NCBI GenBank assembly: GCA_965649765.1 | Contig: OZ287748.1 | Span: forward strand, 34,286,001 to 34,350,000 | Source: Bispira polyomma | Taxonomy: Eukaryota | Reading direction: 5' to 3' | DNA length: 64,000 nt | Shown here: positions 900-35,110 of the stretch, in pieces | How positions within the stretch are numbered: the stretch's first letter is position 1 | How the letters are laid out: every line of letters begins with the position of its first letter | Made by a program: the position numbers and the translations under genes | Notes under the pieces: model-generated | Seen by the model: only the letters and a program-made list of their open reading frames with translations | Databases searched by the model: none | What the model was told of the DNA's origin: nothing

Positions 900-1295
900 G
901 CAGTGACGTCTACACTACTTGATGGTCACTGGTTCCCAGTAGAGAAAAAACCTTACATATAACTATTATGTCTCCTGAGTACATCAAAGACATGCTGACA
1001 TTATATCATCCAGTAAGAACATTAAAATCAACAGATTATATGCTATATTGACAGTGCCAAAATTAAACCCATAAAAACAACAGGCGACAGATCCTTTTCA
1101 TGCAGTGCTCCAAAGCTTTTGGAATACCTTGCCAATCAACATCAGAAAGATTAATTAACTGTCCAGTATTAAATGTGCAATTAAAGGTTTTCTCTTTGAT
1201 GATGCTGATAAAAATCTACTTTAGTTAGTTAATGTGTACTGCAAATGGTGTCGATGAATATCTTTGATAGATTTTGGCACCATAACAACTTTTTA
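900..1295 (+). mobile_element. Degenerate L2/CR1-type LINE 3' end
   Basis: Frameshifted translation HWFPV...SPEYIKDMLTLYHPVRTLKS...TVPK...TGDRSFSCSAPKL(W)NTLPINIR matches the typical L2/CR1 ORF2 C-terminus (LHWLP...APxYL...RxLRS...GxRAFSxxAPxLWNxLP). Confidence 0.8.
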
Positions 1296-1716
1296 TTGTA
1301 ATGTATTGTAAGTATCTTGTAATGCCTTCCACCACCAAGAAACTTTACCGGTCACCATATAACACACATGTTGTTCAAAGCAATGTTATACTGAAATTAA
1401 ATAAATTTAAAAAACAGACACAAAGGTCACTGTCTAGACCAGAAAGCTTTGTATGTTTAAAATTGGATTCCAGCAGCTTTTCCAAGTACACTGCACCTTA
1501 AATGCATATGGTGTTGATGTGTTGCTCTTTTTGTAATTTTTTAAATAGTGTAATGTGTACAGAATTGTAACTTAAATGTAGCTTAAATTATTTCTCTCTG
1601 GAGTTTTTCTGAACTCATTGACATATATTGTGGTGTACATCTGTCTCGCTATAAATGTAATATTAAAATATGCAGTATTAAAACACAAATTGATAAAAGT
1701 TAAAAAAATATAGTTT

Positions 1717-1950
1717 CACAGGTGGCCAACTTAGCCGACGGGACAGCAATAGTGGACAGTAACTTTAAGTGTAAAATTTTGTACATTCAAAAAGCCATCT
1801 GTAAAATATAAAGTGCTTAAAACACTAATTTCTCTGTAATACAGACTTTGTATCAAAAAAGGGTCAGACGGCTTTTTACATGGATAAAATATTTACGCCT
1901 TAAGTTACTGTCGCCTATGGCTGTCCCATCCACTAAGCTGTTCAGTAGTG
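1717..1950. mobile_element. MITE with ~85-bp imperfect terminal inverted repeats
   Basis: The left arm CTTAGCCGACGGGACAGCAATAGTGGACAGTAACTT...AAAAAGCCATCTG matches the reverse complement of the right arm (CAGACGGCTTTTT...AAGTTACTGTCGCCTATGGCTGTCCCATCCACTAAG). Confidence 0.75.
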
Positions 1951-4900
1951 TAAGTATTAAAGTTGTTGCATAACTCTAGTAATTTGGTAATTAACTGTCA
2001 GACGAAGTACATATATAATGAGACAACTTGATCGAGCACATACATTCTACAAGGTAACAGTGCTAAACAGTGTCAAAAATTGAAAATAAATCCGTATTTG
2101 TGGTACTAACCATATCTGCTCCAAAATATATTAATAAATTCTTCTATAGCCAATTTTCCATTCTGCCACCAGTAATAGTAACTATATGGATTTCATGCAT
2201 GTAGAATATTAAAATTGTATGTCTGTCAAATGTTTTTTAGATCATGAAAATGACATGTAACTGGACAAATCACATAATGCCTGGAACAGGAAGTACCTAT
2301 ATATCTTTAAAAATTTCATTTGATTATGCAGACGACACATACATTATCTCCACACGCGGATATATGGATATTTGTTACAGAAGCAAATGGAATTAGCGGA
2401 GTGTAACATATTTTAGACAAAAGAGGCAGCTCCAAAATAACAGAGAAGCCAGCCATATACATCTCCATAGAGTTTTTTTCGTTCTTTAGGTACACATTTC
2501 TAAAGCCCAGTAGCTCTAGCCCGAGTCACAAATGCCATTTACGGCTCACCCTCATCAATAATTCAAAGCTCATATTTTTGCCCAAAACTACAGCTCTTAA
2601 AATAACAGTAGGCCTCAGATTAAGGAAGGTTTCCATATTATAAACTTCCCAATTAGGTTTTTAGCCTGTCCTTAATAGCCCTACATTTAAAAATAATGAA
2701 ATGAAAGTTTAAAAAGTCAGTGCTCTATATAATTCAAGAAATTGTAATCAAATGTGGTTTTAATCTAATTATTAAACATGGCTTTTCAATTACTTTTGAG
2801 GGATTTGTCTGTGATAGCAACTTAATAACTGTTTCTGGTGAAAGGTCAGCTTCAGTGGAAACTTAAACTCAGTTGTGTTCTACAGAACATGAGCCCTGGA
2901 CTGTTTCCTGAAGTGGGGCCCAATGATGACAGTAGCTGTTGCTTTTAAGTCCTTTATGTAATTATACAAGAGATTGGAGACAATGAGAAATATCTTTGTT
3001 AATTGGTTGGTAGAGGCTGAAAGGAGGATAATATATGGTATACACGAAAGTACATATACATAAATAAACCCATAGTAATAAAGGGGTGGGACAAATGTGG
3101 GACGGGTGGGGTGAACTCAAGTAAGAGGGGGGGTTACAGTTGAGTGGGGAGGGGATGGAGCACAGTTGTCTCTTTGTCATCACCAAATTGAGTAAACAGA
3201 TCACATGTTATAAGTCCATGGGCAAATTTATGAAGTTGGCAATTGAGTTGGGTGTGTTCATATATCTATTAAAATCCAGGCAAACTTCAGGCTATCTTTC
3301 TTCATTATATGTTTGCTAGTCCCTTGACTAGGTCCATATATATACAAACAGACATTTTAGTCATTTTCAAAGGGCAAGGCAAATGCAAAACAAAAAAACT
3401 CTCTTAAATAAATATTTTTTGTTCTTATAATATTTTCCTATGTTTGCTTGTACCTTCATATGGCTAAAACTATGAGCAGGTCCAGATGGACAGATGATTG
3501 TACTTTATTACTCTAACCTATTTAACCTTTACAAGAACAAAGCCCAGAGGTCTAATTTGTAGTTCATGTATGAAGTCATACCCCAACATATGATGTCATC
3601 CTATATATCATTTTCTAAATCAGATTTGGATCTCAGTTACGTGACCTGTTGTTTTAAATTCTTATTTCAGGACTAACATCTTGTTCACCACTAAAATCCA
3701 CAACTATGTTTGTCCAAGTTTCATATTTTGGTGTGTGATTTACATATTTTGAGATGCATCTCACAAGATCGCAATACACTGTAGTTTGTGGCTGGTCCAT
3801 ATATTCAACATACTACAGTTCCTATACTCTAAAATTTCTATAATGTTTACACACTAGTTTTGAGATGGGCATCTGTGGACTGCCTACAATTTATAGTGTA
3901 TCACATGACACTGTTATGGTGTTTATTGAGATAATAGTGACATTCAATCAAAACGTGACTGTTAGTGCAAGGGACTACCAATACATATGTGTTGCTATTA
4001 CATTGCTATTAACTGCAATGTATACGTAATCCTAGTGTCATGTTCGACAGGTTTAATTAGTTTGGAAGTGGGTTTAACATCCCTTTCAACATGTTTGTGC
4101 CCTGTCACGAAGTGCAGTTCACCGGTAGAGGAAATCAGCACAGGGTACTTGTTCAAGATGTTCTGTTCTGACCCACCTTCAAGAAATCTACTGGGTGCGG
4201 ATCCAGTCAGTATACAAAATAATAGTCCAATCGGAGAAAAGGTTGTAATATGACTTCAGTCGTAACCAGTATATAAATGTTGAGGTGCAAGGCGAGTTGA
4301 TACAGATGTGTTTTGAAAGTCCTTTTTCGCAAGCCTGTGATCCTTGTATCCATATGAAGACTGGCAAGGAGACTGATCCATTAAGCAAGTGCTACAACTT
4401 TAAATGAGTTTGAACCTGCAAGTTTTTTGGTAAGAAGTAAGAAGAGGCGGAGAGACAATTTTCGTCTATCGGATGTTACTCATTATATATCAAATGTTCC
4501 TTAACGTAGCCACATCATCCTACGTTGTTGTGAAACTCTTTTAATAGCATCTGCACTGAGACGTGTTGTCAGTAACTAGAGTTCGGACTATGGACATTGA
4601 CAGATAGAAGGGTCAGTCAATTTTCATTCAAATGAGCTGCCGAGGCATGGATGTTTTTGACCATGGGTTGCAGGCTGAAAGCAATTTCCAGGCATTATGA
4701 CAGGCGAAAAGATTAGTTCCAGTACCCTCTGCTACTGTATAGTACCACCTTCCATACTGGCAATGTGTGAGCGGGGCATTACGGATATACCTCTAAGCTT
4801 AGATGGCTGCGTCAGGGTTTGCATGCCTCGACACATTATAGGTAGATTTCACCTACGTACAATCTGTTCGGAGATAATATGTGGAAATTGGCTTCAGAAA

Positions 4901-5254
4901 CATCTTTTTATACATTCAGTGATTTTATTTTAATCTAGGCATCAATGGGGATGTGCTCATTCACCTTTTACATGCTTATTTTTAGATAACTTTGTAAGAT
5001 CAAATTATTTCTGTATTCATGTTGATTTGTACATAACAGCAGCAATTACAAGGGTTCATTAATGATTGGAGTTATGGTGCCCTTAACACCTTAAGCAATA
5101 ACTTATACATGTATATGTTTACCAGTAACGTTGCTGCAGTTAAGGTGTCCTTAGCACAAAACATAGAAATGTGATCAATAAACTATTACTCCTATGCTTT
5201 ATTTCTTCTTCTGCTCGGTTTGTGGCAATATATACATCTGAATATCTCTGCAGA

Positions 5255-16240: not shown

Positions 16241-17175
16241 TAAAAATTCACAAGATACTTGAGCCTGAAGCAAGGCTAACTGCTGCCCATTCTTTTTCTC
16301 AATGGCCCGATCACTGGGAGAGTTTAAAATAATTTGGGAGATGTAGATTACATTAGGTCTGTATTAACAGCCTCACACACGAGCCGGTGCTGTCGTCCAA
16401 ATTGAGAATTATGTGACCAAGAATCAAGTGGAGATTCCTAGAAGTGGATGGCAAAGTGATACAGGGGTATTTCCATATGGTCCTCCCTAATTCGATTTGT
16501 AGTGGAACGAGCAGATGGGTTCTAATGAGAAAAACGGCTGAGACTGGGAGAGAGATGGAAAGCAAGAGGAGGGGAAAGAGCAAATCTGTCCCGTATGCAG
16601 ATGATATAGATGTAATGGCTAGAGGGGTTTTTGTTGTCGAAAATATTATATACATGATATATGTATATGATGGGTATTGTTCATGGTCTTGTATGCAAGA
16701 TGCTCTTTATTGAAAAAAAACAATTAATTATGAACCCGTTCGTGAACTTGAAAGCATATTATTTTCTATAAAGAATTTTATATGCTAAAATAATGTTGCA
16801 GTTGCACAATAAAAAAATTGTGAAAGTTATCATTTACAATTTTAATCAATGTACTAAATAAAATAGGCACATTTCGTATTATACAGAAATAGGACATTTA
16901 GCATGCAATGGTAGCATAATTGTGAGTTGTTACTGTTTTAGAAATGTCACATAATAAAAATAAGATATGTTTGTTTATAAAGTACAATGTACATCGGTAT
17001 ACGTTCTTATGTAAGAACGTGCAATGAGATGAAATAATGCCAAAGTGTTCTGATCATGTATCTGAATGTACAAAATATGCTGCAAACAAAATGAAAAAAA
17101 AAAAACTGCCTCTCCTTTTCTGTTTTCATGTTGTTTCCCTCTGATAGAAGGTTAGAAAATTACCAAGACACCGTT

Positions 17176-17181: not shown

Positions 17182-20100
17182 CATTACATTTAATAATAAA
17201 TAATCTTGAACAGTAATTAGTATATTAATTTATGAAAACAAAATATCGTTTGAAAAATGTCTCTGACAATATAAATACAATTAATGAACATATAATGGTT
17301 AATTTAATACAAGCAAAAGATATACAAGTCATTTTTTTAAAGTGGGTAGAAGCTGTAACATTCTAATTTGTGGGTTGGACATCTGGGTATGCAACTTTAC
17401 TCAACTGCCTTCTATTTTAGAACTGGATTTTAGTCATTTGGCATGAAATAAAATATGACAACAGTAAAGTTTTTAAAACTTTATTACTTTCATATATATA
17501 TATATATATATATGTGTTACTTGAAACTATATATGGATACAAAATTGAATGAAATGTACAGTATTAACAATAACACAAGTGATATACATGATTTATATTA
17601 TAAATATTAGAAATGTGATCCTAAACAAAGTACAGTTACTATTTTAACTCTCTTTTATAGATATAAAAAGAGAGATTGGTGTAAAACCTTCAGTTCTTCA
17701 AAATACTCTAAAAGTATGGTATCCAAATTACACAATTTTAATCAGCCAGTGTTTATGAAAAAATTAAATTAATGTGTCATTTGCATAGAATATTTGGTAG
17801 ACATATTAAAACCAATATTTTTCTGAACAAATAGAATTTTCTGATGCATTTTAACCAAACTAGATTTCACTCTCATGCAAAAATAAATACATTCCAGATT
17901 TTAATGAAAAAAGTCAATTCTAATTTTCCTTAATTTATTAACAAAATATGCGCCTCTGTTTCTATTTCCAAACACTAACTCCAACCACAACTCATTATGA
18001 CACCAAAAATCCTTAAAGATAAAAAAATTATGTTGAAAACCTATTAAATACCTAATTGTACTGTACAAAACAATTGTTTTGATTACAATGCCCCCCTCTC
18101 AGTACTTTGGCCAGACATTGCTCTCTGCTAATCATTGATATCAAGAGCCCAGAGTACTTACTACTACTACATATACAACTACATAACCAGACCAAAGGAA
18201 TGTATTAATGCCAGACAGCACAGGAGGAGGGGATACATGAATTTTTAAACATCAAAACAAACTCGACCTGTATTTGAATATTTTATAAGGAGAAAAATCC
18301 ACAGTAGGATGGAGAGGGGGGGAGGGGAGGGGTGTGTTCTGTTATGGCTTTGGCTCACCCCACTAGTACTACTCACTAGTTGTAGTACTACAGTAGCCAA
18401 TTCAATAATGATCCTACTCTTACTAAGTAGAGCAGACTAATAAATGTGTCCTAGAAACAAAAATTCTTATTTGGGGTGTAAAAAATGCAAGGCAGGTGTA
18501 TAAATAATTAAAACTACACGATGTACATATTTTTGTGTAAAACCCCTTCTATATTATCGCCGCCTTACATCTCGTCATATAATATCAATTACCCCAATGG
18601 ATACATTTGTGTTGTGTGGGGGTAGGGGGATGATAATGAAAACTGTTTGAAATTATGGTTTTAAAATAACTTAATTAACTGATCACCTTGTAAGATCTTC
18701 ATTATATTTACACATTAAACAAAATGATTTTTTTGTTCATTTTGTCTGAATGGTGTGTAATTTGTAACAGAAGGCTTTCTAAAGTTACTATCTTGACGTC
18801 AATGAAGCAACTTTTTGTTACATTATATACACATATATATATTGCTAACCTCTGTCACAATTCACTAATAAATTCAAAATGGAAAAAGATCAGTGTATTT
18901 TCATACACCAGTAGTTTATAACTGTACTTTTTTTAATGAACACATGATAACATACATCGCAATGTTGATAACATAAATACATGCACTATAAGTATATTTC
19001 ATTTCTGCCTAGTGTTTTGGGCAAATATTCAGTTTCCTGCTAATTTAACCAGATGGAAGTAGTAAAAGTCAACATTTTTCTTACAACTTATTAGAGTATT
19101 GGATTTTAAAGGTCAATGATCATGTTTTATGTTTCACACACAAAGACTGATATTGGAGCAGCAAACCAGCTTATTGTTAGAGTGATCAGAGAGTCAGATT
19201 AAATGTGACTTGTAAATGGCCTCAACTGGTAGTCCTATCAGCTGTTATTTTAACAACAATGGTTTGACAGGAGGCTGGGGTGTCTGTATAGTGAGAAACA
19301 GAGAGGGATATTCTGCGCAAGTTCTTCTCTTTTTATTGTCCATATGTGCATGGATTTTTGTAATTCAGATTCAGATACGGGAAGGGGGGGGGGGGAATAA
19401 AATATACAGTTACTCTCTATAGTAATGTTTACTGCTATTCCTGCTAAATTGTAAATACAACAGTTTTAAATTGATATATATAACAAATCACTGGTAAAAT
19501 AGTGACTTCTGTCAAATTATTGGTGAGTTTTCTATTTAGATATATTACCTTTTACCTTTGTTTTTGGGCAGTGAGATGCATGTGACTTTTAGTAGCTATT
19601 TTAGCTGAATACCTACCCCCCCCCCCCCCCCCCCCCCTTGTCAACACATCTTAATATTGTCAGAACTTTCTTAAATATTTTCTGTATTAATTGAGTGTTT
19701 TATTTGGCCAAGAACAACTCTTCACTCATTAAGTCCATACATTAAAAAAGATATTAACATATCCCTTATTTAACAGGGTCTGAATGGTATATAACAATTC
19801 TTGTTGCTGTCTCTAGTATAACACTGACACCAAACCCACAGAAACTATTCACTGGTTCTACTCAGAATACTGAAGATGGCAATAGTTAGCAAACTACTCT
19901 AGCACTAGAACTGGTTGCAAAACAACACATATGCCGTGGCTATGAAAATAATATAATAACTGATAAAACTAGTGACTAGAACAGTGATTGTATAAATATA
20001 CATATTAGACGAATTAAAATCTGGTAATTATCTTAAAGATATCATTAAAAAAAACAACTGTCGCCATATGTCTAAGTCTTGCAAAAATATAAGCAAACAA

Positions 20101-21758
20101 TATTTATGAAATCCTTGATGCATACATTTTTATATATACATGTCTTTCAGACATATATAGATATATAGCATCCTGTGATTTATACCTATTACAAAGATAC
20201 AAAGATAACAAGAATATAAATTAGATATAGATAGATGTATATGAAGTATAGACTTGCTTTAGTTCATACTCTCCAGGTTAAAATTAAAAAAATACATATG
20301 AATGTAAATAATATCAAGAGTGAAGTGGTTGATTTGACTCATGTAAACCTGTTTAATATTTCAAGTGTAGTTTTTAAGCTACTTGATATTATGGGTAAAA
20401 TAAGAATATATAATAAGAGTATTTAAAAGGGAGAGCTTGATACAATTATGTCAATGTGAATGATAGACATACAGGTATTTTTAAGGTTTTATAAAACATT
20501 AGACTAATTCTGGTAGTACCAGTTCAAAAGCTGTTGTAAATCAGTTCACATGAAATATGTTAACACCTTATATTCTGGAGAGAATATATCGAGTATATGT
20601 GAGCTTATTTATGATATATCTTAAATTTTCTAATAATTTCAGACATAGAGAATGAATATTACAGCTTTGAATTCTGAAAACAAAACCAAAAGTAACCAAC
20701 TAATCTTTCATGTAGACATGTACTGTATTGATAATGTCATGAGTCCTATATGGTTGAACAAATCCTTCCTAAATCAAGTGAATATAAGAAATTGGTGACT
20801 AGGTGTAACTAACTAGATATTGGTAGGATTTGGTAAGACATATTAACATATGTAACATAATGGACATCTTTAAAATCAACATTGCAAAGTTCTACAATCC
20901 TTTTGCAAATGCTACATATTTCACATGACAAAAAGGTCAAAACATATTTGACATGAACAATTGTCAAACATGTTAAACACACTTATGAATTTTCTTATAT
21001 GTTAAAATCCTAAAAGTGTATACTATTTTATAGATGTAGTATTCCTGACTTTGGGGCAATTTACTTCATAAACAAATATAAATTAACATTTCATTCAATC
21101 TTAATGTTTTACACTAATACTGAAAAAAAAAAAATTTGACTCATTCTGTAATTCTTGTAAGAACAGAAAACATACACATGTAAAACATACTATTCTGACT
21201 AGATTCAGTATGACTAGCTTTGAAATGCAATATCCCTTGACTAGAGCTACAAAAATTATATTAATTGTATATTATACAAGGACCATTTTAGGCTATGGAT
21301 AATATGAGGAAATGTGTATGGTTAATGTAAATATTATATTATAATACACGTAATACCAATTGGAATGTTAAACTTGGAACTTATGTTAATTATGTTAAAT
21401 GAATGGATAGAAGTCTGTCAGACAGCATCAGGAATGTAAAAAAGTAAGTTTTATAACTGGGGAAATATTGTTCACTAGTACAGTCTTAATATAATAGATG
21501 ACATGTCTTGTTAAACTGCATTACAGTCGGGTTTTTTACTAAATGTCGAAGCCACTATTGCAAGATTTATTTTTGAAACAATTTTAGCACTTCTCTATGA
21601 CGTTGATAAGGTCAGTGTGCAAAAGAGGTGTAATGAACCTTCTCAAACCACAAACCCTGACACCCACAACACTGTACACCCACCCACCCACACCCCATAC
21701 CCTCCTCCCACTTAATATACTCTCAATAAAATCAATAAATGCAAACCCCCATCACCCC

Positions 21759-22886: not shown

Positions 22887-25800
22887 CTAGAAACAAAACA
22901 ACAAAATATGACAGTCACTGGTCACACAAAAAAAACATTCCTTATTCATATTTATACTCATCTATTAATGTTTATCAATGGTGTCTTGTATTCAAAGCAC
23001 AAATTTACCTTTTCTTCACTGTCCTACATTAAGAGAGATGCTTGGGGATGACTATTTATCAACGTACCCAATGTTATTCAGGGATTTAACCTCAGCTAGT
23101 GTTTTACCTACTAGGACCATAATGGCAGATGACATACATTTAGCTTTCAAAACATTTCTTTCAAAAGCTTGCCAAAATAATATAAATAAACCTTAAGGTT
23201 CCATGGGGATCATTTGGATATTCATTGGGTTCCGGTTTGTTATTCTGTAATAACTTTATGGGGAAATATATCATGTGTGATTTATCTCTGTTTCAGAGTG
23301 TCACATTACAATTGATAATAAATTTTGAGTACATTATTTGTGATACTATTCTGTTTCAAAGTGACTACACCACAGATATTATTTTTTTCGGCAAAAACGT
23401 TCCTGTTGTAAGGCTATACCTTTTTATAGCAAAAGTGACAAAATAGAAAACTGTTAGAAAGATATACTTCACATTCACATTCAGTTATAATTATTTAATT
23501 TTCAGTAACAGTAGTAGTTACTCAGAATATGTTAAAGGAAGTGTAACATCTGAAACTGCAACATAAAAGTGAACCTCATCCTATGAGCCTTGTATCAAAT
23601 GCTATTGGAAGACATCTGATTAAAAATTTATCAATGGTTACTTTGTTTATCACCCCACAGGAGTTTCTTGTTACAAGGTACGCATTCCACAAACATGCAT
23701 ACTCTCGTGTTGTAAAGGCTTTGGTCATTTACAAAATTTTGTGCAAAATTTTATTGTAAAGTTGTATATAGAGGCAAGTGTAAAAAAATCTTATCCTAAA
23801 CTTGCATCAGACTTCTTTACTCCATGAACCTTCATAATGTACTATTAAACTTGGCCTTCAGATGTATCAAGGTCAAACTAATATTATTAGTAAACCATAG
23901 AAAGCGACTGTCATAGACATGTATATTGTTTTATCATAAATTACTATCATTTTGTTACAAAAACACTAATAAGCAATTCCACACTGTCCATTTTTGATTT
24001 GAAATTTAAACTTATCTTAATTACACAAATACACTTAATCTATCCAACAAATGTTTGCATGGCTATTACAGTAAATATAATCTTTTAAGTCTAAGGCAAC
24101 ATAGTACAAAGTTAAAGACACATCATATGGATGGTAGTTATTCAACTTATCAGCATTCCATAGAAATGCGTTTCTATGGCAAACAGTTTCAGTCAACAGG
24201 ACGAGAAACATATGAAAATGTTTTAGTACCTGATAGGCGAAACTGTTAGAACCATTTTCAATTAATTGATTGCATCTATAAAGTGTGACCCATCCCTAAT
24301 TGTATCTTCAAACATAACTATGAGCCAGGGGGACCCGGTGGTTATATAGATTGGACAATGGTGTCAGCTACATAGACAATCAGTTAAATATTACCAGTCC
24401 ATGTAGTGACAGAAATAAATATCGGTCAATAAATGTATGGGTTTAGATTAAAGTGGCGCAGCTCCAAATGTAGCTTAGGTTTATGGCTCAATATTCAATA
24501 AATGCATTTTTATAAAAGGCTTTGGTATAACATGATTCCCAGGATAAGCCAGCATCTCATATAACACCAATGACATTTGTCAATTGAATAATTAAGACCA
24601 AGAATAAAGTATCATTAATGTTAAAGGGAACTTAAATGACATAAACAAACTTAATTCAATTCTCTAATTCCACCCTCTATAATAATACACTTCGGTTTAT
24701 TACCTCTACAAATATATATTCAAAAATAATTTCTGGTACATTTCAATTGTCATCTCCTTAACTACAAATGGACTACAATAAACTGTGATACAAACTTATA
24801 CTTTACATTATATTGAGACAAATTAACATGATTAAGAAGAATACAAATCACACTTAATAATTGTAGTATCTTTAGTACTACTAATTTGCTACAGTTAATA
24901 CACATTTACAGCAGTAGGTATTTGTCTATTTACCCAAGTATTCAGTATCAAACTGTGTGTGGTATGTGTGAAGTTTACCAGTTGTGTCAACACAGAGACA
25001 GTCCAGGTAAATATAACAATCGCTCTTCCTGACAGTCACTTTAATGATTTTCTGATTTGTCACACACAAATACAAAGACAGGTAAATTCAGCTTTAAATG
25101 ATTTATTGTCTGTATGGCTTTGTGGCAAAATTTTACATTTACTTATAACTGTTAAATCATTTTGACTTTATTTTTTAGGGTTACACATGTAAAAGACAGT
25201 AGAATTCTTATATATATCGAGTACTTGATGTTTATTATATGTAGTTCAGTGTTATATAATAAAGGCATTTGACACAACAGTGAAGTTACTCCTTGCATTT
25301 TAATTGTCATCTATTTAACTAAAAATGTACCAAAACAAACTTGGAAATTATTGAGAACGTTAATGGCATACAAACTTAAACCTTATATTATCTTGAGACA
25401 AATATATGCAGAATGCAAATACACTTAACAATTGCAGTATCTTTAAAAATTCTGATTTCATGGAGTTTGAACTCTCATGAAATAACATAAGTATACATGA
25501 AATAATAAACATCGGTTGATACAAAAAAGAAAACATATACATTGTACACCACCTTTGTAAACAAAACAAAATCATTTCTGAAACATCTGTATTAAAAATT
25601 TAAAAAAAAGTTTTTGTCGGCCATACCTCAACTGTAACTTCAATAGGAATTATTTAAAAAACTATTTTTTGAATAAAATAAAATATAACAATCTACCCAC
25701 CTTATTTTAGCGCGTACCATTACAGTAAATTCCTTTTTAGCCCAATGTAATACCCCACAGCTTATAATTATTTAAATCCTTAATCACTCCTGAATCTCCA

Positions 25801-26118: not shown

Positions 26119-26250
26119 CGCTGGATTAGCTATCCTCCGCATCGACTCGGGAGGGGGATGGCGGTAGGGTGGGGAATATCGCCCCGGCAATGCACTGGGG
26201 TGGAGAGAAACGTGCATCCCAACCACCCCTTGTTTAGATTCCATCATCAT
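26119..26250 (-). CDS. Pou4: Pou4 coding exon 1 (44 aa)
   Basis: MMMESKQGVVGMHVSLHPSALPGRYSPPYRHPPPESMRRIANPA. The PGRYSPxYR...MRR..NP pattern is the invertebrate Pou4/acj6-type N-terminus. The ATG context is CAACAATG. Confidence 0.92.
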
Positions 26251-34130: not shown

Positions 34131-35110
34131 CAAGCAATAGATTAACACCAACTGGACATCAGTTTTAATGTAATGGTAAGCAGTACATTCACACCAACTG
34201 GACATAAGTATACTTCTAATGGCAAGCAGTATATTTACACCAACTGGACATTAGTATACTTGTAATGGTAAGCAGTACATTCACACCAACTGGACATTAG
34301 TATACTTGTAATGACAAGCAGTATATTAACACCAACTGGACACAAGTATACTTGTAATGACAAGCAGTACATTCACACCAACTGGACATAAGTATACTGG
34401 TAATGGCAAGCAGTACATTCACACCAACTGGACATAAGTATACTGGTAATGGCAAGCAGTACATTCACACCAACTGGACATAAGTATACTGGTAATGGCA
34501 AGCAGTACATTGACAACAACTTGACACAAGTATACTTGAATTGGCAACTAGTATTTGAACACCAACTGGACACAAGTATACTTGTAATAGCAAGCAGTAT
34601 ATTAACACCAACTGGACATTAGTATACTTGTAATGGCAGGCAGTATATTTACACCAACTAGACACAAGTATACTTCTAATGGCAAGCAGTGTATTTACAC
34701 CAACTAGACATAAGTATACTTGTAATGGCAAGCAGTATATTTACACCAACTGGACATAAGTATACTTCTAATGGCAAGCAGTATTTGAACACCAACTGGA
34801 CATAAGTATACTTGTAATGGCAAGCAGTATATTGACTCCAACTGGACACAAGTATACTTGTAATGGCAAGCAGTACATTTATACAAACTGGACATATGTA
34901 TACTTCTAATGGCAAGCAGGGTATTTACACCAACTGGACACAAGTATACTTGTAATGGCAAGCAGTATATTGACACCAACTGGACATCAGTATACTTCTA
35001 ATGGCAAGCAGTATATTAACACCAACTGGATACAAGTATACTTCTAATGGCAAGCAGTGTATTTACACCAACTGAACACAAGTATACTTGAAATGGCAAG
35101 CAGTACATTT
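34131..35110. repeat. Minisatellite, 46-bp unit, ~21 copies
   Basis: Consensus ACACCAACTGGACATAAGTATACTTGTAATGGCAAGCAGTACATTC; unit starts at 34191 and 34237 are 46 bp apart. Confidence 0.95.

What the first reader, a model, noticed from the sequence alone, without database searches (positions are those of the whole stretch)
21361..21450. Near-perfect miR-1 complementary site in the Pou4 3'UTR: possible slicing target
Seen: + strand 21431-21449 GGAATGTAAAAAAGTAAGT versus miR-1 nt 2-20 GGAAUGUAAAGAAGUAUGU. The mRNA (5'-ACUUACUUUUUUACAUUCC-3', ~310 nt after the stop) pairs perfectly with nt 2-11, has a G:U at 12, pairs at 13-17, mismatches at 18 and pairs at 19-20. Pairing across nt 10-11 is the geometry needed for Argonaute cleavage, which is rare in bilaterians (cf. 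miR-196/HOXB8). A second site, an 8mer (21361-21368), lies 70 nt away and a third (nt 2-9) is at 18197-18204. There is no hairpin partner arm, so this is not a mir-1 gene. Inference: muscle-expressed miR-1 clears Pou4 mRNA from myogenic lineages. Alternatively the site acts as a sponge or decay trigger for miR-1. With the miR-279 cluster it would form a compact miRNA module ~310-565 nt from the stop.
Basis: partly seen in the sequence, partly recalled or inferred. Interest (0 to 1): 0.85.

Follow-up and report, generated by a model that had tools for sequence, protein, structure and literature searches.

The report
miR-1 target site, worm Pou4 gene
A marine worm's nerve-cell gene Pou4 carries a real, unusually long match to the muscle microRNA miR-1; it is most likely a strong ordinary silencing site in an old miR-1/Pou4 link, and probably not the rare kind of site at which the message is cut.

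Summary
The site is there as described. It pairs with this genome's own miR-1 at nt 2-11, 13-17 and 19-20, with G:U at 12.

Slicing is weakly supported. The long pairing is private: the closest orthologue (88% aa) and 11 other Pou4 loci reach only 12-14 of 19. Genome-wide, matches this good are no commoner than a reversed control (31 vs 59). Central pairing is all A:U plus G:U with 3' mismatches, a geometry human AGO2 slices slowly (PMC11100590). Seven of nine mir-1-like copies wobble at nt 10. No RNA data exist.

In seven other annelid-like Pou4 loci, miR-1 seed matches in the first 1.2 kb after the stop are enriched on the mRNA strand only: 11 vs 2.2 expected, 1 antisense. miR-279 sites are kept in both Pou4 paralogues of two species (also noted in s1-616395).

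Best reading: ordinary seed repression, old with site turnover, plus a species-specific 3' extension. Slicing about 10%.

The parts
21431..21449 (-). Main miR-1 site: 7mer-m8 seed extended to nt 11, G:U at 12, pairs 13-17 and 19-20; a cut, if any, would fall between 21439 and 21440
   Evidence: duplex -22.5 kcal/mol, 0.69 of a perfect duplex
21400..21418 (-).
   Evidence: 28 of 20,000 flank shuffles reach 15/19
21361..21368 (-). miR-1 8mer seed site, 69 nt downstream of the main seed
   Evidence: 222 of 20,000 flank shuffles
18197..18204 (-). Third miR-1 seed match (nt 2-9), conserved in the orthologue but inside an 87% conserved block (18192-18293) beyond the conserved AATAAA; could equally be a TEAD/M-CAT DNA site
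21196..21245 (-). miR-279-family seed cluster: 8mers at 21238-21245 and 21196-21203, 7mer-A1 at 21211-21217; more at 20796-20802 and 19973-19980
   Evidence: five such sites at +640 to +784 in orthologue L005
21759..22886 (-). Pou4 exon 2 (POU-specific domain, homeodomain, stop TAG at 21761-21759)
26119..26250 (-). Pou4 exon 1 coding part (inferred; ATG, GT donor, phase 0 with exon 2)
   Evidence: sequence, splice sites; no RNA
21566..21571 (-). AATAAA 188 nt after the stop, upstream of all miRNA sites; no AATAAA there in the orthologue. If used, the mRNA lacks the sites
19104..19358 (-). Conserved downstream block (71%) holding an AATAAA (19332-19337) that aligns with the first AATAAA of the orthologue: candidate main poly(A) region or enhancer

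Best explanation
Canonical microRNA repression. miR-1-loaded Argonaute binds two closely spaced seed sites (7mer-m8 with 3'-supplementary pairing, and an 8mer) in the Pou4 3'UTR and lowers the mRNA by deadenylation and translational repression. miR-279-family sites 120-190 nt further on act the same way. The miR-1/Pou4 link is old in annelids and is kept by site turnover. The long extension of this one site is a species-specific extra, helped by a U-run pairing with miR-1's A-rich middle, and gives at most slow, minor cleavage. Shown: sequence, pairing, seed enrichment in relatives, miR-279 conservation, an Argonaute with intact catalytic residues. Inferred: that the sites are in the mRNA, that they repress, and that the purpose is to keep a sensory-neuron factor out of muscle (miR-1) and of non-neuronal cells (miR-279).
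For: Seven other annelid-like Pou4 loci (including Capitella and Paralvinella), first 1.2 kb after the stop: miR-1 6mer 11 vs 2.2 expected from the same loci's flanks (p about 2e-5), 7mer-or-better 9 vs 1.1, antisense 1 and 0. Among ten loci it ranks 3rd of 4096 hexamers on the sense strand, 3238th antisense. These UTRs are not alignable except one 33-nt piece. None extends beyond 14/19. Two seeds within 69 nt here. The miR-279 8mer is one of only two overlapping 8mers shared by both Pou4 paralogues in two species. Weak central helix and PMC11100590 argue against fast slicing.
Against: The closest orthologue (L005) and both b-paralogues have no proximal miR-1 seed, so the link is not obligatory in this clade. 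No RNA shows the UTR, and an AATAAA lies upstream of the sites. The control with many unrelated annelid 3' flanks could not be run; only four own-genome flanks were on hand (0 sites). Seed enrichment could partly reflect a general 3'UTR bias. The 15/19 neighbour with a broken seed is not explained by seed targeting.
Confidence: 0.6

Rival explanations
1. Chance or neutral: the long match is an accident of an AT-rich genome, or the sites lie outside the mature mRNA, and nothing is regulated here.
For: At most 2 mismatches over nt 2-20: 31 places (2 are mir-1 genes) vs 59 for the reversed control; 337 vs 363 for a looser pattern; 5 vs 5 for the exact 16-mer. Given a seed, the extension has p about 1e-4, so 0.1-0.7 such sites are expected among 1,000-5,000 UTR seeds for miR-1 alone, and a few across about 61 annelid families. 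Absent in L005. Upstream AATAAA. Local micro-repeats feed the 8mer.
Against: Seven other genomic sites of 17/19 or better have no seed and at most 13/19 within 100 nt, while this one has an 8mer and a 15/19 neighbour (3 of 20,000 shuffles for both). Strand-specific seed enrichment in other Pou4 loci.
Confidence: 0.2
2. Selected slicing site: miR-1 directs Argonaute to cut Pou4 mRNA between 21439 and 21440, as miR-196 cuts Hoxb8.
For: Unbroken Watson-Crick pairing nt 2-11 and no true mismatch until nt 18 with the two canonical copies. The genome's Ago-clade gene (C11, about 37.70 Mb) keeps D-E-D-H, read exon by exon. Fly Ago1 cleaves 11-nt centred sites in vitro (PMC12905440). The site region is weakly structured (z +1.8). 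Three miR-1-like elements within 90 nt.
Against: Not conserved in any of 14 other Pou4 loci, whereas the Hoxb8 site is in a conserved UTR (PMC6223193). Penalty 3-5, above the 2.5 cut-off. The nt 9-12 helix is AAAG:UUUU, +2.7 kcal/mol as a 4-bp duplex, weaker than AUAA (+1.8), which cost 600-fold on a 3'-mismatched target; that test used 16-bp targets and human AGO2, so it transfers only roughly. Seven of nine mir-1-like copies have G at nt 10 (G:U at the scissile pair). No genome-wide excess of such sites.
Confidence: 0.1
3. DNA-level element: the seed matches are TEAD/Scalloped M-CAT sites in downstream enhancers; the M-CAT motif is letter for letter the miR-1 seed match.
For: TEAD site given as CATTCCT in PMC3025863; the main and third sites both contain it, and the third sits in a 100-bp conserved non-coding block.
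Against: A DNA motif should not prefer the mRNA strand: 19 sense vs 4 antisense in the first 3.5 kb (p = 0.0013), against 14 vs 9 upstream. It does not explain pairing beyond the seed.
Confidence: 0.06
4. Decay trigger or sponge: Pou4 mRNA removes miR-1 in neurons (target-directed miRNA degradation).
For: Seed plus pairing to nt 13-20; centrally paired triggers occur in some cases (PMC10899785).
Against: Validated triggers typically have a 3-11 nt loop breaking nt 9-10 and often sit in conserved sequence. Here the centre is paired, the 3' pairing is broken at 18 and stops at 20, and the context is unconserved. A transcription-factor mRNA is unlikely to be abundant enough (inference).
Confidence: 0.04
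5. Decayed relic: the three miR-1-like elements descend from once more perfect complements (local duplication, or an inserted mir-1 fragment).
For: The main and 15/19 elements depart from miR-1 at non-overlapping positions (12, 18 vs 2, 8, 10, 17), so their consensus is closer to miR-1.
Against: No similarity between the units outside the 19-mer and none to mir-1 flanks in register (2-10 of 20); region is single-copy; no hairpin. The pattern was found after the fact.
Confidence: 0.05

Closest known systems
Canonical bilaterian miRNA seed sites with 3'-supplementary pairing (8mer, 7mer-m8)
   Same: Perfect match to nt 2-8, extra pairing at 13-16, several sites close together after the stop, kept by turnover across species.
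   Different: Pairing also runs through nt 9-11, which is uncommon; repression untested.
miR-196/Hoxb8 slicing (PMC6223193, PMC3975064)
   Same: Homeobox-gene 3' region, long complementarity spanning nt 10-11, one G:U.
   Different: Hoxb8 site is essentially fully complementary, conserved and shown to be cut. This one has a central G:U, mismatches at 18, 21, 22, an A/U-only centre, no conservation and no cleavage data.
Cnidarian and plant near-perfect miRNA targets (PMC3975064)
   Same: Extended pairing to a transcription-factor mRNA.
   Different: Fails their score (3-5 vs 2.5 or less); no genome-wide enrichment of such miR-1 sites in this genome.
Drosophila miR-279/996 'antineural' targets nerfin-1, escargot, insensible (PMC5800810)
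   Same: miR-279-family seed sites on a neural transcription factor.
   Different: Pou4 as a miR-279 target was not found in the library (0 papers); here it is a prediction, in annelids.
TDMD triggers (Cyrano, NREP, BCL2L11; PMC10899785)
   Same: Seed plus 3' pairing.
   Different: No central loop, short interrupted 3' pairing, unconserved context.

Membership tests
Canonical miR-1 seed target | Watson-Crick match to nt 2-8 of a miRNA encoded in the genome | tested here: met
   7mer-m8 and 8mer against own mir-1 copies
Canonical miR-1 seed target | Site lies in the transcribed 3'UTR | tested here: inconclusive
   Only DNA runs found; upstream AATAAA unconserved, downstream one conserved
Canonical miR-1 seed target | Seed matches kept above background in orthologous UTRs | tested here: met
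   11 vs 2.2 expected, strand-specific, in seven loci; but absent proximally in the closest orthologue
Canonical miR-1 seed target | Seed-dependent repression | not testable with these tools
   Needs reporter or knock-down
Argonaute slicing target (miR-196/Hoxb8 type) | Watson-Crick pairing across nt 10-11 | tested here: met
   Met for 2 of 9 mir-1-like copies; G:U at nt 10 for the other 7
Argonaute slicing target (miR-196/Hoxb8 type) | Near-perfect complementarity (penalty 2.5 or less) | tested here: not met
   3 (g2-21), 5 (g1-22); 2 only if scoring stops at g20
Argonaute slicing target (miR-196/Hoxb8 type) | Extended pairing conserved in orthologues | tested here: not met
   Best 12-14/19 in 14 other loci; no congener available
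Argonaute slicing target (miR-196/Hoxb8 type) | Catalytically intact miRNA Argonaute | tested here: met
   D, E, D, H motifs in separate exons at C11 about 37.70 Mb; activity untested
Argonaute slicing target (miR-196/Hoxb8 type) | Cleavage product opposite nt 10-11 | not testable with these tools
   No RNA or degradome runs
TDMD trigger | Unpaired central loop plus long 3' pairing, conserved context | tested here: not met
mir-1 gene | Hairpin with a complementary arm | tested here: not met

The most novel reading that the evidence does not exclude
A lineage-specific miR-1 slicing site has arisen in an annelid Pou4 3'UTR on top of an ancient seed-based link: a recent switch from repression to cleavage in a bilaterian, within a three-element miR-1 array.
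Probability: 0.1. Interest if true: 0.7.

Novelty: new member of a known kind. Interest (0 to 1): 0.4.

Why it matters
The likely result is a predicted, apparently undescribed regulatory link: annelid Pou4 is held under miR-1 (old, with site turnover) and, in this clade, miR-279. It is a clear case of target conservation without sequence alignment, and it bears on whether miR-279's 'antineural' role is ancient (raised as open in PMC5800810). That interests miRNA and evo-devo specialists but is a known mechanism. If cleavage were shown, it would join the very short list of bilaterian slicing targets and show how one arises from a seed site.

Tried and rejected
mir-1 gene or hairpin at the site: rejected. 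A mir-1 paralogue with A at nt 12 that would pair perfectly: the two other genomic copies of the 16-mer do not fold as precursors; five more near matches have at most weak folds. Repeat origin: region single-copy (that search skips simple repeats). Inserted mir-1 flank: no support. Expression and 3' end: only three runs found, whose contigs cross the intron without joints, so they behave as DNA; they show no variant at the site. Closer relatives: none beyond P0001. Becker 2019 (G:U at nt 12) and Christodoulou 2010 (annelid miR-1 expression) were not held, so muscle expression rests on amphioxus (PMC3145563) and my own knowledge. No paper on miR-279/Pou4; the 12 listed of 17 hits for miR-1/Pou4f1 were not about targeting, judged from titles and abstracts. 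The bacterial promoter scan is irrelevant.

Full report
Setting. The window holds a Pou4 gene on the minus strand: exon 2 at 22886-21759 with POU and homeodomain and an inferred exon 1 at 26250-26119. The protein groups with annelid Pou4 proteins (Malacoceros, Lamellibrachia, and clusters holding Capitella and Paralvinella). A second Pou4 lies about 70 kb away. A relative (ENA ERZ22147071) has both genes on one contig; its orthologue is 88% identical with about 0.52 substitutions per four-fold site. An earlier scan note calls the animal a fan worm; I tested only that it is an annelid.

Observation. The genome has a mir-1 cluster on C3. Nine mir-1-like sequences lie within about 6.3 kb on one strand; two have the canonical sequence and pass the Rfam cut-off, seven have G at nt 10, and one of those folds weakly. 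Against the canonical copies the site at 21431-21449 pairs at nt 2-11, 13-17 and 19-20, with G:U at 12 and mismatches at 1, 18, 21 and 22; -22.5 kcal/mol, 69% of a perfect duplex. The 8mer and the third site are as stated. There is no hairpin. I also found a degenerate 15/19 complement with a broken seed at 21400-21418, between the two seeds.

Is it more than chance? Locally yes: 1 of 20,000 permuted guides reaches 17/19 in the first kb. Genome-wide no: 31 places match nt 2-20 with at most two mismatches, against 59 for the reversed control; nine non-gene places keep the seed, five keep nt 2-11, and one (C3:42629474) is better than ours. The exact 16-mer occurs 5 times against 5 for the control. 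Given a seed, such an extension has p about 1e-4, i.e. 0.1-0.7 expected among 1,000-5,000 UTR seeds for miR-1, and several across about 61 annelid families. What chance explains less well is the company: an 8mer and a 15/19 element within 100 nt (3 of 20,000 shuffles), which none of seven other good genomic matches has. This last test was framed after seeing the pattern.

Conservation. The proximal UTR does not align with the orthologue beyond the first 85 nt. The orthologue has no miR-1 6mer in 5 kb and a best match of 12/19. No other Pou4 locus exceeds 14/19. So the extension is private, at the resolution available. In contrast, miR-279-family sites survive in the same unalignable stretch: four 7mer-A1-or-better sites in the first kb here, five in the orthologue, one 8mer in each paralogue, and the genome encodes at least nine miR-279-like hairpins. 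The third miR-1 site is conserved, but inside an 87% identical 100-bp block, so this adds little.

The unexpected result is at greater distance. In seven long loci from other annelid-like species, the miR-1 6mer occurs 11 times in the first 1.2 kb after the Pou4 stop against 2.2 expected from the same loci's upstream and distal DNA (p about 2e-5); 7mer-or-better sites 9 against 1.1; the antisense strand has 1 and 0. In ten loci the motif ranks third of 4096 hexamers on the sense strand. Six of the seven loci carry at least one. Two of them are related (one clade), and five are unnamed and placed only by the tree. The strand bias argues against the identical TEAD M-CAT motif. A matched control of unrelated genes could not be run, so a general 3'UTR bias is not excluded.

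Is it in the mRNA? Not shown; the three runs found behave as DNA. An AATAAA at 21571-21566 precedes the sites but has no counterpart in the orthologue, whose first AATAAA aligns with 19337-19332 in a conserved block. With the conserved miR-279 sites beyond the miR-1 sites, a UTR of roughly 2.4 kb that includes the main site and the 8mer, but not the third site, is the simplest inference.

Mechanism. Cutting is possible in principle: nt 10-11 pair, the Ago-clade gene keeps D-E-D-H, and fly Ago1 cuts 11-nt centred sites in vitro (PMC12905440). It is unlikely to be efficient. For human AGO2, pairing beyond nt 16 is dispensable only when nt 9-12 pair strongly; A/U-rich centres lost 250- to 600-fold on 16-bp targets (PMC11100590). 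Here nt 9-12 are AAAG against UUUU, weaker than those cases by the same nearest-neighbour model (+2.7 vs +1.8 and -0.3 kcal/mol), although this site does pair at 17 and 19-20. It misses the near-perfect cut-off used for cnidarian slicing targets, and seven of nine mir-1-like copies would wobble at nt 10. It also lacks the usual loop and conserved context of decay triggers. The best reading is seed-driven repression reinforced by 3' pairing and a neighbouring 8mer, next to a miR-279 cluster (0.6). Rivals: neutral or outside the mRNA 0.2, slicing 0.1, TEAD element 0.06, decayed relic 0.05, decay trigger 0.04. The biological role (keeping a sensory-neuron factor out of muscle and non-neuronal cells) is inferred from miR-1 expression in amphioxus somites, my own knowledge of miR-1 and Pou4, and the antineural role of fly miR-279.

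Verdict. Observation confirmed; interpretation partly supported. A new predicted member of a known kind. I found no paper describing miR-1 or miR-279 targeting of Pou4 in the searchable library, which lacks most subscription journals. Interest 0.4.

Noticed in passing
G000:C3:1437400-1443800 (-), L009: Tandem cluster of nine mir-1-like hairpins with one seed but diverged nt 10-12 and 3' ends; only two are canonical. Looks like a lineage-specific mir-1 expansion.
   Followed up: partly
G000:C1:34378610-34379700 (-), L018; relative L023: Second Pou4 gene about 70 kb from the window's, same strand; the pair is also present in the relative, so the duplication predates their split. Both keep one miR-279 8mer in an alignable block at about +365 to +390.
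   Followed up: partly
window 19973-21245; L005 +640 to +784 after the stop: miR-279 site cluster kept by turnover in unalignable sequence (4 vs 5 sites in the first kb; background 0.06 per kb). Stronger conservation signal than the miR-1 extension.
   Followed up: yes
L027-L034 (G000 C3, C7, C9, C11): At least nine distinct miR-279-family hairpins in several clusters.
   Followed up: partly
G000:C3:42629473-42629492 (+), L019: A better miR-1 complement than the finding (nt 1-11 and 13-20, G:U at 12), no hairpin, no long ORF within 5 kb; gene context unknown.
   Followed up: partly
window 16294-16560, 18192-18293, 19104-19358: Conserved non-coding blocks downstream of Pou4 (91%, 87%, 71% with L005), candidate enhancers or UTR elements; four more upstream of exon 2.
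   Followed up: no
window 34308-34952: A short repeated unit occurs four times (seen as 14/19 hits); probably a tandem repeat.
   Followed up: no
window about 23020-23070 and 23744-23911: Short dispersed repeats in the Pou4 intron (high contig depth and many loose ends).
   Followed up: no
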